This document shows, one piece after another, positions 43,501 through 45,683 of a stretch of 64,000 nt of DNA. The translations under genes and the position numbers were made by a program. The notes beneath the pieces were generated by a model, which was not told the origin of the DNA, searched no databases, and saw only the letters and a list, made by a program, of their open reading frames with translations. The DNA lies in the NCBI GenBank assembly GCA_964057225.1, contig OZ059898.1:7564001-7628000 (forward strand). The letters run 5' to 3'. Source of the stretch: Auanema rhodensis (lineage: Eukaryota; Animalia; Nematoda). Positions within the stretch are counted from its first letter, which is position 1. Each line of letters begins with the position of its first letter.

Positions 43501-44637
43501 GGAGTCTCGAAAATGTTCAGTGAATATTCCGCTGCTAAGGAGGTTAGTATATTTCTCAGAGATAGTGATCTAAGTTTAAAATTTTAGATGAATGCCGCTG
43601 AAGCTCAGCTCTCATCTGATAACATCAAGAACCAAGAAATTACTAACTTGGATGGGCCTGATGCTGCCAAGTATAAGCATCTCCTTGTTCGGGATACCGC
43701 CGGCAAAGAATTAAAGCCTCTCACTGACCGAGTCAACATGGAAATTGCCACTTTGAAGAACTTGAAGAAGGAATTCGTCAGAGTTATGCTTGCAAAGTGT
43801 CAGGTAGCAAATCGTTATTAAGATGATGTAAATAATTTAATGCATTTAAAGGCTAGCCCAGAAGAGGATGAATGTTTATCCGGACCAGCACAAAGACAAC
43901 GCGTCCAATTTTTGGAGAACAATCTCGATAAATTAACGAAGGTTCACAAGCAGGTTAGTTTGTTAATTACCTGAAATTTCAATACTGGTATTTTCCAGCT
44001 CGTCAGAGATAATGCTGATCTTCGGGTTGAGCTGCCAAAGATGGAATCCCGTCTTCGTGCTCGTGAAGAAAGAATTAAGCAATTAGAATCCGCTCTTCGT
44101 GAAACCAAGGAACGCGCTCAACATGAACGTAGGAAGTATCAACAAGAAGTTGAAAGAATTAAGGACGCTGTGCGTCAAAGAAATATGCGTCGCCAGAATG
44201 CTCCACAAATTGTAAAACCAATTCGTCCAGGACAAGTAAAAAACATAATTTTCTTTCTCATTATCAGTACAATTAAATTACAGAACTATAGTTCACCAGC
44301 TGTTGTTCCTGTTATCCGCCCTGCTAATGCCGGTCAAGGTGAGCTCATAAAAGGAGTTCAAGTATAGGGACTCGTGGTCGGTTCTTCTGAGTATTATGTA
44401 TCCGTGGAAGATCTTGAAAACTCAGAAGCCGGCCAATACAAATGTTACCCCAATACCATGAGTATTTCTCAATTTATAGCTGATATTTGAATCAAAACCT
44501 CGAATCTTTTTTTTAGATGCTCAAATCACATTCAGCAGAGATCCGTTTTTGGTCCAAAATATAAACAAACCCTAATGTTTCTACAAATAACATATTGGTG
44601 TGATTATCTAACGTTGTCTCTTTCAGCTGCCCAATAA
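40520..44637 (+). CDS. unc-116: Kinesin-1 heavy chain; last exon ambiguous (stop at 44367 unspliced, or at 44490, 44575 or 44637 via alternative acceptors)
   Basis: [81 protein letters not shown] and the tail QIVKPIRPG (IAK-like motif). Confidence 0.97.
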
Positions 44638-45485
44638 GGAGAGAAATCTTAAAATAGAGCTTCGTCAGAGCTGTTCCGCGGTTCCGTCGCCTTAAATTCT
44701 CTGTGGGCTATGTATTTCATCAAAACTGTCTTGTGTCTGTCACTACTTTTCTCGGAAGGTAGTCTTTTATCTCTGCTGCTGCTGTGATGTCTTATTTCCA
44801 TAAAATTGGCATCTCTTTTTTTTTGTCAGTTATGTTGCCTTCTATACGGTAGTCACGATTGTTTATTATGTATAATTTATTGTTTTCCAAATTGCTCTTG
44901 GTGGGTTCAACTCTTATCTTGTACAGTTAATCTTATTAGGCGTATTCAGCCCTCAATCTTCGGTTCGGATTGTGCTTTTACCTTGTCTTCTCCACTAATC
45001 GAGCTTCTTCACCTGGTTGTTCCTCTGGTTGCCAAACGCATCCTCTCTAACTAAATTGGTTGTGTGTGTATGCGACTAACATTACCAAATCTAGTTCTAA
45101 CGATAGTCTTTTCAGCTATGTGCATGTGATTTTATCTCTTTTCTCGATAATGGCATAACTTTTCCTTTTAAACTATTATTATTATTATAATAAATCTGCT
45201 TTTCAAATAATATGTAAGAATAACACTGAAGATTGCATGAAATTTATTGAGTGAATGAACGAAATATCAATGAACCCCCAACCAGCAACACGAACACGTA
45301 CCCTAGAAAATTCAGTGACATTGCAATTAAATTATTCAATTATATTTGATGGATTTCAGTTGATCTGGTAATTGTAAATATATATTAGTAATATCTTTTA
45401 TTCGAATAGAGGGTCATTCAATCCCAATCGTATCATATTCATTTTATCGTCTTGTATACTTGTTTCTTAGATATTCTAGACTAAA

Positions 45486-45683
45486 ATGGTTGCTTGGAGA
45501 ACTGCCGGAATTAACTATGTTCGCTTCTCTCAAATTGCTGCTGAGATCACCAAGAATTGTATCAAAGTTAGTAAATATTTTCAAACCAAATATTGTTTTA
45601 TTGTTTAGAATGATACAAAGAAAGCTCCAGCTACCTTGAAGACAGTTGTTTGGGAAAACGGCAAACCCAAGCCCAAAAATTGA
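45486..45683 (+). CDS. Mitochondrial F1 ATP synthase subunit epsilon (51 aa, 2 exons; missed by the ORF track)
   Basis: MVAWRTAGINYVRFSQIAAEITKNCIK|NDTKKAPATLKTVVWENGKPKPKN*. The WR.AG.NY..FS.IAA and WENGK signatures are present. Intron 45567-45608. Confidence 0.93.

What the first reader, a model, noticed from the sequence alone, without database searches (positions are those of the whole stretch)
44339..44637. Structured element right after the kinesin-1 stop codon: candidate UAG readthrough signal and/or alternative C-terminus switch
Seen: the unspliced frame ends GVQV-TAG (44365-67), followed by GGACTCG and a 16-bp stem with one 2-nt bulge (TGGTCGG-tt-CTTCTGAGT 44375-44392 pairing with ACTCAGAAG-CCGGCCA 44420-44435). 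A competing 9-bp helix ACTCGTGGT/ACCATGAGT (44370/44455) also exists. The frame stays open 40 codons past the stop ([43 protein letters not shown] 44488-90). A strong donor G|GTGAG at 44339 has three in-frame acceptors (44480 ADI*, 44517 DAQITFS...*, 44627 AAQ*). Known: UAG-G, a ~7-8 nt spacer and a stable structure is the MuLV-type readthrough layout. Inference: this region could make several kinesin-1 tails; [10 protein letters not shown] resembles an acidic LIR motif, reminiscent of the GABARAP-binding KIF5A tail.
Basis: partly seen in the sequence, partly recalled or inferred. Interest (0 to 1): 0.8.

Follow-up and report, generated by a model that had tools for sequence, protein, structure and literature searches.

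The report
Conserved leaky-stop signal in kinesin-1 intron
Inside the last intron of a nematode kinesin-1 gene lies a conserved in-frame UAG stop followed by a covarying RNA hairpin and a conserved hidden protein tail, which looks like a programmed stop-codon readthrough switch, although the main mRNA simply splices the whole region out.

Summary

The whole region lies inside a 288-nt GT..AG intron (44339-44626). The main mRNA contig of all four RNA runs (one study) removes it, giving ...RPANAGQ-AAQ*. Only one run has a 165-nt contig inside the intron.

Relatives change the picture.
- Seven related kinesin-1 loci keep the hidden tail end M-x-ISQ-x-x-A-[DE]-[ILV]*.
- Three Caenorhabditis-like species reach it by an uninterrupted unspliced frame, with no stop and no hairpin.
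- The window and four other species, from two protein subgroups, all have the same layout: G|GTGAG donor, 9-12 sense codons, in-frame UAG-G, and a hairpin 6-8 nt later.
- Six of 11 stem pairs show compensatory changes.
- The post-UAG frame is under purifying selection (pS 0.77, pN 0.23).

Best reading (about 0.55): an intron-retaining mRNA plus structure-stimulated UAG readthrough adds a conserved alternative C-terminus. Main rival: UAG| acts as an alternative 3' splice site.

I found nothing on this in the literature or in earlier scan notes.

The parts
44284..44338 (+). Penultimate coding exon of the kinesin-1 (unc-116-like) gene: [18 protein letters not shown] plus the first base of the next codon
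   Evidence: The spliced RNA contigs of runs X1-X4 place exon borders here. The frame was read.
44339..44626 (+). Last intron, 288 nt, GT..AG. It is removed in the dominant mRNA. The four introns upstream are 45-48 nt.
   Evidence: The joint 44338|44627 is in the main contig of all 4 runs.
44338..44364 (+). Nine in-frame sense codons (GELIKGVQV) between the donor and the UAG when the intron is not spliced
   Evidence: The relatives have 9-12 codons here, always in frame (27, 27, 30, 36, 36 nt).
44365..44367 (+). In-frame UAG followed by G, conserved at the same place in L002, L011, L012 and L022
   Evidence: and alignment A3.
44368..44374 (+). 7-nt spacer GGACUCG (relatives: GGAUUC(GC), GGAGACGC, GAAAUCG)
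44375..44435 (+). Stem-loop. The basal stem UGGUCGG/CCGGCCA is shared with relatives. The upper 9-bp stem CUUCUGAGU/ACUCAGAAG and the 27-nt loop are specific to this species.
   Evidence: Folds. Pairing probability about 1.0. Covariation. RNAalifold finds the same helix.
44368..44490 (+). Post-UAG open frame of 40 codons ([10 protein letters not shown]...[10 protein letters not shown]) plus the TGA stop
   Evidence: The homologous frames in L011 and L012 have pS 0.77 and pN 0.23.
44458..44487 (+). Conserved C-terminal decapeptide [10 protein letters not shown] (relatives: M[STHI]ISQ[LH][IV]A[DE][IL])
   Evidence: Alignment A4 has M, I, S, Q and A invariant in 7 species.
44412..44576 (.). Intronic stretch covered by a separate 165-nt RNA contig in run X1 only (depth 26.5 against 170.7 for the main contig)
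   Evidence: table 8. It crosses the 44480 and 44517 acceptors unspliced. UAUAAA lies at 44560-65.
44627..44637 (+). Coding part of the last exon: (G)CT GCC CAA TAA, giving AAQ* and the true stop of the main isoform
44638..45207 (+). 3' UTR of the main isoform. AAUAAA lies at 45189-94 and the X3 contig ends at 45207.

Best explanation
The last intron of this nematode kinesin-1 gene doubles as an alternative coding 3' end.

1. Most transcripts splice it out and end ...RPANAGQAAQ*.
2. A minority that keep the intron, or end inside it, are read on as ...[12 protein letters not shown] up to the in-frame UAG at 44365.
3. The UAG-G context, together with a stable stem-loop beginning 7 nt downstream at the entrance of the ribosome's mRNA channel, lets a fraction of ribosomes insert an amino acid instead of terminating.
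4. Those ribosomes continue for 40 codons and give the motor a different tail that ends in the conserved peptide [10 protein letters not shown].

Shown: the sequence layout, its conservation with compensatory changes in five species, purifying selection on the post-stop frame, and removal of the region from the main mRNA.

Inferred: that an intron-retaining mRNA is translated, that the UAG is actually read through, and that the hairpin stimulates it.
For: 1. The same architecture occurs in the window and in L002, L011, L012 and L022: G|GTGAG donor, 9-12 sense codons, in-frame UAG-G, a 6-8 nt spacer and a hairpin.
2. These five fall into two protein subgroups (..DNADLRVE.. and ..EMADLRME..), so the arrangement is old.
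3. Covariation in the helix: 87% of cells are paired and 6 of 11 pairs changed on both sides. The covariation score is 0.545 against 0.274 in shuffles (0 of 500 reach it) and 0.03-0.15 when the partners are slid.
4. L002 carries matching 3-nt insertions in both arms.
5. RNAalifold finds this helix as the only consensus structure.
6. Hairpin z-scores are -2.1 to -3.9 in all five species, and the 5' arm has pairing probability about 1.0 within 250-nt contexts.
7. The 3' arm encodes different residues in different species (TDH, ADH, DDQ, SDNH, AGQ) yet keeps pairing. The constraint is therefore on the RNA.
8. The post-UAG frame is coding. Between L011 and L012, both 52 codons, pS is 0.77 and pN 0.23, with differences by codon position 15/10/28. 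The other frames show pS about equal to pN and contain stops, and the alignment collapses after the ORF stop.
9. A TCG/AGT serine switch lies upstream of any internal AUG (my reading of the sequences).
10. The tail end M-x-ISQ-x-x-A-x-x* is kept in 7 species.
11. Three Caenorhabditis-like loci (L001, L003, L009) reach the same tail through an uninterrupted unspliced frame. They lack both the UAG and any hairpin (z -1.0, +0.3, +0.3). Stop and structure thus occur together or not at all.
12. The UAG is in frame with the upstream exon in 5 of 5 species, although the spacing varies (27, 27, 30, 36, 36 nt).
13. The layout matches known stimulators: the MuLV UAG-GGA with an 8-nt spacer, and the 8-9 nt spacer plus stem with a variable loop in alphaviruses and Drosophila kelch and headcase (PMC3159437; Feng 1992, PMC241386, as cited there).
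Against: - In all four RNA runs (a single study) the dominant contig splices the region out.
- The only sign of intronic RNA is one 165-nt contig in one run. It covers neither the UAG nor the 5' arm, and it could be pre-mRNA.
- No reads, footprints or peptides across the UAG could be examined.
- Only five sequences, from about three independent lineages, carry the covariation. The structure was derived from those same sequences.
- The window's own post-UAG peptide is poorly conserved apart from its last ten residues.
- Alternative splicing is a far commoner route to alternative tails than readthrough.
Confidence: 0.55

Rival explanations
1. UAG| is an alternative 3' splice site (..UAUAG|GGA). 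A phase-0 donor, the one right after KPIRPGQ (44235|44236 in the window), would join to 44368. That skips the small VYSP-type exon and gives ...KPIRPGQ-GLVVG...ISQFIADI* without any recoding. The hairpin just inside the alternative exon would tune use of this weak acceptor.
For: - The join is in frame in all five species by construction.
- A real donor sits after KPIRPGQ in the window, L002 and L022.
- This species does use weak acceptors such as uuuaaag|G.
- YAG|G is conserved.
- Alternative splicing is the commoner mechanism.
Against: - L011 and L012 have no intron after KPIRPGQ, only a poor cryptic CAG|GTCTAC.
- The acceptor lacks the nematode UUUUCAG tract in every species.
- This reading does not explain why the UAG stays in frame with the retained upstream exon in 5 of 5 species despite length changes of 3 and 9 nt.
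- It does not explain why the stem sits at the readthrough-typical 6-8 nt.
- It does not explain why Caenorhabditis-like species, which use plain retention, lost stop and stem together.
- No such joint appears in the RNA contigs, although contigs drop rare forms.
Confidence: 0.17
2. The region is just an intron. Its conserved pieces would serve RNA-level roles such as splicing control or intron-retention-coupled regulation of kinesin-1 level. The downstream frame would no longer be translated in this species and would be a decaying relic of the Caenorhabditis-type retained tail.
For: - The dominant mRNA removes it.
- The window's post-UAG peptide is divergent except at its end.
- L010 and L013 relatives have lost the intron and the tail altogether.
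- The hairpin alone is only moderately unusual.
Against: - There is a clear coding signature after the UAG in L011 and L012.
- The frame is open and the terminal decapeptide is kept in the window, with synonymous differences from relatives.
- A relic would not keep the UAG, the +4 G and a covarying stem in five species.
Confidence: 0.13
3. The UAG is recoded by A-to-I editing to UIG (Trp), as at the hepatitis delta amber/W site. Alternatively, the downstream frame is translated on its own from an internal start in an intron-derived transcript.
For: - UAG is the preferred ADAR triplet (established knowledge).
- A Met ten residues from the end is invariant.
- The X1 contig begins inside the intron.
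Against: - The A of the UAG is not held in a conserved duplex: its pairing probability is 0.17, 0.91, 0.04, 0.23 and 0.63, with different partners.
- The helix lies wholly downstream of the UAG.
- Coding selection in L011 and L012 extends upstream of any AUG, so a free-standing small ORF does not explain it.
Confidence: 0.05

Closest known systems
Drosophila kelch and headcase readthrough, and alphavirus nsP3/nsP4 UGA readthrough, each with a 3' stem-loop (Firth et al. 2011, PMC3159437)
   Same: - An in-frame stop is conserved across species.
- An 8-9 nt spacer is followed by a 10-14 bp stem, often with a small bulge.
- The basal stem is conserved while the loop varies greatly in length.
- Compensatory substitutions occur, and a coding signature continues past the stop.
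   Different: - Those stops are UGA (headcase UAA) and sit at the end of the normal mRNA's ORF.
- Here the stop is UAG-G inside a sequence that the main mRNA removes as an intron.
- No experimental readthrough has been measured here.
Murine leukemia virus gag-pol UAG readthrough (type III, UAG-G plus pseudoknot; Feng et al. 1992, PMC241386; Wills et al. 1991, 1994, as cited in PMC3159437)
   Same: A UAG followed by GGA, a spacer of about 8 nt, and then a G+C-rich stem.
   Different: - MuLV needs a compact pseudoknot with specific loop-2 and spacer bases. I did not test for a pseudoknot here, and the conserved element is a plain hairpin.
- This is a cellular gene, not a virus.
Alternative C-termini by retention of the last intron, as the Caenorhabditis-like orthologues L001, L003 and L009 appear to do
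   Same: The donor position (..N/Q G|GTG..) is the same, and the hidden tail ends the same way, in ISQLIAEI*.
   Different: In those species the retained frame has no stop and no hairpin. In the window and four other species the frame is gated by the UAG.
Kinesin-1 heavy chain (UNC-116 / KHC / KIF5)
   Same: - The motor-domain exons match Pfam PF00225.
- The tail carries the [10 protein letters not shown] (IAK-type) motif.
- Relatives are named kinesin heavy chain by their sources.
   Different: The ISQ[LF]IA[DE][IL] tail was found only in these rhabditid loci. No paper in the searched library contains ISQLIAEI-type strings or links unc-116 to readthrough.

Membership tests
Programmed stop-codon readthrough with a 3' stimulatory RNA structure | In-frame stop conserved across species with an open frame continuing behind it | tested here: met
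   UAG at the homologous place in the window, L002, L011, L012 and L022. Where the contig reaches, 28-52 open codons follow.
Programmed stop-codon readthrough with a 3' stimulatory RNA structure | Protein-coding selection on the extension | tested here: met
   L011 against L012: pS 0.77, pN 0.23, most differences at the third codon position, and the other frames contain stops. For the window itself, only the last 10 residues are conserved.
Programmed stop-codon readthrough with a 3' stimulatory RNA structure | Leaky stop context (UAG-G, type III) | tested here: met
   G at +4 in 5 of 5 species. GGA follows the stop in 4 of 5 and GAA in L022.
Programmed stop-codon readthrough with a 3' stimulatory RNA structure | Stable structure starting about 8 nt after the stop, conserved with compensatory changes | tested here: met
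   Spacer of 6-8 nt. Six of 11 pairs changed on both sides and 0 of 500 shuffles reach the score. RNAalifold agrees. z is -2.1 to -3.9.
Programmed stop-codon readthrough with a 3' stimulatory RNA structure | An mRNA exists in which the stop lies in the translated frame | tested here: inconclusive
   The main contig of 4 runs splices the region out. Only a 165-nt intronic contig, in 1 run, was seen, and it does not reach the UAG.
Programmed stop-codon readthrough with a 3' stimulatory RNA structure | Readthrough product shown (footprints, peptide or reporter) | not testable with these tools
   No ribosome profiling, proteomics or bench assay was available.
MuLV-type (gammaretroviral) readthrough signal | Compact H-type pseudoknot after the 8-nt spacer | not tested
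   Only nested structure was analysed. A stretch just 3' of the stem (ACAAUGAGGAU) is identical between L011 and L012 despite saturated synonymous sites. That could hint at further structure.
Alternative C-terminus by last-intron retention | Unspliced frame open from the donor to a conserved end | tested here: met
   Met for L001, L003 and L009. In the window the frame is interrupted by the UAG.
Amber/W A-to-I editing site | The edited UAG lies within a conserved RNA duplex | tested here: not met
   Pairing probability of the A is 0.04-0.91, with different partners in each species.
LIR (Atg8/GABARAP-interacting) motif in the tail | An acidic-flanked [WFY]xx[LIV] core conserved among orthologues | tested here: not met
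   [10 protein letters not shown] aligns to unrelated or gapped sequence in the six other tails.
Kinesin-1 heavy chain | N-terminal kinesin motor domain plus a coiled-coil tail with the IAK-type motif | tested here: met
   PF00225 on two exons, E 5e-14 and 7e-19. [10 protein letters not shown] at 44206-35.

The most novel reading that the evidence does not exclude
Rhabditid nematodes carry an ancient, structure-driven UAG readthrough switch in kinesin-1. It acts only on an intron-retaining mRNA, so splicing and recoding together set how much motor receives a conserved ...ISQLIA[DE][IL] tail. The Caenorhabditis lineage later turned the stop into a sense codon and lost the hairpin with it, which amounts to a natural 'mutant and loss of stimulator' experiment.
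Probability: 0.5. Interest if true: 0.8.

Novelty: new member of a known kind. Interest (0 to 1): 0.68.

Why it matters
Proven cases of programmed readthrough in animal cellular genes are few. Cases with a covarying 3' stem-loop are fewer still, and for nematodes the one review I opened mentions only a single predicted case (PMC4973966).

This candidate has three attractions:
- It sits in kinesin-1, a central and well-studied transport motor.
- It points to a conserved alternative tail peptide that I could not find in the searched literature. Such a peptide could change cargo binding or autoinhibition.
- It comes with a natural control: sister lineages that lack both the stop and the hairpin.

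It also shows that a 'stop codon plus hairpin' inside an annotated intron can still be a coding feature. The test is cheap: reporters with stem and compensatory mutants, plus tagging the tail.

Tried and rejected
- Rfam on 44200-44800 at E up to 10 gave only chance hits (E 5-9), so no known RNA family, snoRNA or miRNA explains the long intron.
- A micro-intron from G|GTGAG to UAG| is rejected. It would be 29-38 nt, too short for nematode splicing by my knowledge, and it shifts the frame (length is 2 mod 3 in all species).
- An in-frame alternative acceptor downstream of the UAG (window 44411, 44426, 44429, 44480) is rejected as a general mechanism. None is conserved in position across species, and each would remove codons that are under selection.
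It has no RNA support, and the X1 contig runs through it unspliced.
- The LIR motif and the competing helix are not conserved.
- The search for more relatives ran dry. The metagenome scan gave only non-rhabditid kinesins. The profile search of 1.84 billion representatives with the tail found only the two Caenorhabditis-like ORFs already known.
- Full-length annotated UNC-116 isoforms could not be reached, because the length window of the word search excludes them for exon-sized queries.
- The literature searches for unc-116 with readthrough, ISQLIAEI-type strings, and R05D3.7 isoform names found nothing relevant.
- Contigs L003-L008 carry upstream introns and so look genomic (or unspliced). 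They say nothing about retention in that species.

Full report
**1. What is in the window**

The gene on the + strand is a kinesin-1 heavy chain. Two exons match the Pfam kinesin motor domain, with E 5e-14 and 7e-19. The tail carries [10 protein letters not shown], and relatives are named kinesin heavy chain by their sources.

- Donor G|GTGAG at 44338|44339.
- Unspliced frame GELIKGVQV, then TAG at 44365-67.
- Spacer GGACTCG.
- A stem of 7 bp, a 2-nt bulge and 9 bp (44375-92 with 44420-35).
- 40 further open codons ending [10 protein letters not shown], then TGA at 44488-90.

The hairpin folds at -23.8 kcal/mol. Its z-score is -3.7 on the tailored 67 nt, -2.4 on 76 nt and -1.55 on 106 nt. The whole intron is unremarkable, with z -0.63. 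A stem of at least 7 bp starting 6-8 nt after a TAG is found at 7.3% of all TAGs in the window. Rfam finds nothing here.

**2. What the RNA shows**

Four runs of one study hold the locus as spliced contigs, so they are RNA.

In all four, the main contig joins 44338 to 44627. The whole finding therefore lies in a 288-nt GT..AG intron (44339-44626), while the four introns upstream are 45-48 nt. The main protein ends ...RPANAGQ-AAQ* with stop TAA at 44635-37. The 3' UTR runs to about 45207, 13 nt after AAUAAA.

One run (X1) has an extra 165-nt contig at 44412-44576, with depth 26.5 against 170.7 for the main contig. It stops 11 nt after a UAUAAA and does not reach the UAG.

Contigs drop rare forms and cannot measure levels. 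This shows that splicing dominates, but not that it is constitutive. Raw reads were not available, and the single calls allowed for each reads tool are spent.

**3. Relatives**

A word search with the unspliced ORF found genomic ORF fragments from other nematodes. Their contigs were fetched.

*Caenorhabditis-like loci (L003-L008, L001, L009).* These have the canonical end ..N|A*. The donor is AAC G|GTGTG and the last exon gives A plus a stop. Their unspliced frame runs on without any stop to GVF...M[ST]ISQLIAEI*, over 24-29 codons whose length differs by whole codons. An annotated Caenorhabditis sp. 36 protein uses the spliced end (P0012).

*GC-richer loci (L002, L011, L012, L022).* These share the window's arrangement exactly:
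- a G|GTGAG donor;
- 9-12 in-frame sense codons;
- an in-frame TAG followed by G;
- a hairpin 6-8 nt later;
- where the contig reaches, an open frame of 28-52 codons ending M.ISQ[LH][IV]AD[IL]*.

*Distribution.* The five UAG carriers belong to two protein subgroups. One (..DNADLRVE..) includes the window, L011, L012 and the Caenorhabditis-like loci. The other (..EMADLRME..) includes L002, L022 and L010. The arrangement therefore predates their split. The Caenorhabditis-like lineage has neither stop nor hairpin. L010 and L013 have lost the last intron and the tail altogether; L010 also shares the window's downstream gene.

**4. Is the hairpin selected?**

- On alignment A3, the 11-bp helix has 87% of cells paired.
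- Six pairs changed on both sides.
- The covariation score is 0.545, against 0.274 in shuffles (0 of 500 reach it) and 0.03-0.15 for slid partners.
- L002 has a 3-nt insertion in each arm, and the two insertions pair with each other.
- L022 changes G-C to U-A.
- The window keeps the basal stem and adds its own 9-bp upper stem and a larger loop.
- RNAalifold returns this helix as the only consensus structure between the donor and the end of the stem.
- In 250-nt contexts the 5' arm pairs with probability about 1.0 in every species.
- Hairpin z-scores are -2.1 to -3.9 in the five UAG species. They are -1.0, +0.3 and +0.3 for the stop-less Caenorhabditis-like segments.
- The 3' arm encodes different residues in different species, so protein constraint does not explain the pairing.

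Caveat: there are only five sequences, from roughly three independent lineages, and the structure was derived from those same sequences.

**5. Is the frame past the stop coding?**

L011 and L012 both have 52 codons after the UAG. Between them pS is 0.77 (saturated) and pN is 0.23. Differences by codon position are 15, 10 and 28. The other two frames show pS about equal to pN and contain 3-7 stops. The alignment collapses right after the ORF stop.

A TCG/AGT serine switch and the shared DHNED lie upstream of any internal AUG (my reading of the sequences). Translation must therefore enter at or near the UAG.

In seven species the last ten residues keep M, I, S, Q and A invariant. The window differs from relatives there partly by synonymous changes (CAA/CAG, GCT/GCC).

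**6. How translation gets past the UAG**

*(a) Intron retention plus readthrough.* This fits everything:
- the UAG is in frame with the upstream exon in 5 of 5 species, although the spacing is 27, 27, 30, 36 and 36 nt;
- the context is UAG-G;
- the stem sits where known stimulators sit: an 8-nt spacer in MuLV, and 8-9 nt in alphaviruses and Drosophila kelch, with a conserved basal stem and a variable loop (PMC3159437);
- lineages that need no readthrough lack the stem.

*(b) UAG| as an alternative acceptor, joined to the phase-0 donor after KPIRPGQ.* This is coherent for the window, L002 and L022. L011 and L012 have only a poor cryptic donor there. The acceptor lacks the UUUUCAG tract everywhere. 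The in-frame spacing and the position of the stem would then be coincidences.

*(c) In-frame acceptors further downstream.* None is conserved in position.

*(d) A 29-38 nt micro-intron.* It is too short and shifts the frame.

*(e) Amber/W-type editing.* The UAG is not in a conserved duplex.

*(f) Free-standing translation of a small ORF.* This does not explain selection upstream of the AUGs.

I put (a) at about 0.55 and (b) at about 0.17. A non-translated relic or a purely RNA-level role in this species gets about 0.13, and editing or internal initiation about 0.05. About 0.1 is left unassigned.

**7. Comparison with what is known, and novelty**

The element works like the stem-loop-stimulated readthrough signals of kelch, headcase and the alphaviruses. 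Its first six bases (UAG GGA) and its spacer are the same as in MuLV. I did not test for the pseudoknot that defines the MuLV class, so I do not file the element there.

It differs from all of these in lying within a sequence that the main mRNA removes as an intron. Two regulated steps would therefore be needed.

Nothing on this turned up:
- No relevant paper links unc-116 with readthrough; the single hit concerns Girdin in sensory neurons and was not opened.
- No paper contains the tail motif.
- No paper names R05D3.7 isoforms.
- A profile of the tail found no further relatives among 1.84 billion representatives.
- Earlier scan notes for this genome mention two other readthrough candidates elsewhere. 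I did not test them and they did not affect this reading. None concerns this locus or its relatives.

Verdict: this is a new, well-supported candidate member of a known kind, and it awaits direct evidence.

Noticed in passing
window 45189-45207 and 45486-45608: The kinesin 3' UTR ends about 13 nt after AAUAAA, where the X3 contig ends at 45207. The main contigs of X1, X2 and X4 run on past 45300 towards the next + strand gene (MVAWRTAGINYVRFSQ..., which looks like a mitochondrial ATP synthase epsilon-type protein), about 280 nt downstream. This may be a co-transcribed operon pair. The same neighbour follows the kinesin gene in L010.
   Followed up: partly
L010:681-800 and L013:759-870: A related species has no last intron and no ISQ tail. 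After the intron that follows KPIRPGQ, the gene ends VYSPSVAPANMQL*. This is a natural loss of the whole alternative 3' end.
   Followed up: partly
L020:319-700 (same sample as L010): A second, fast-evolving kinesin-1 tail copy (..[38 protein letters not shown]) ends soon after IYSTTHIVPTKIRL*. It may be a divergent paralogue in that species.
   Followed up: no
L011:2610-2625 and L012:1623-1638: The 11 nt just 3' of the stem (ACAAUGAGGAU) are identical between L011 and L012, although synonymous sites are otherwise saturated. There may be further RNA structure (a pseudoknot partner) or a protein-binding site. A second predicted hairpin follows in both.
   Followed up: no
window 44236-44283: The 48-nt intron after KPIRPGQ is a multiple of three and free of stops. 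A plain ORF scan therefore fuses three coding pieces into one 108-codon ORF (44041-44367). Prokaryote-style gene callers make the same fusion in public contigs.
   Followed up: yes
window 44560-44576: UAUAAA, a common nematode poly(A) signal variant by my knowledge, lies 11 nt before the end of the X1 intronic contig. This could be an intronic poly(A) site for the alternative isoform. No poly(A) tail was visible in the contig.
   Followed up: partly
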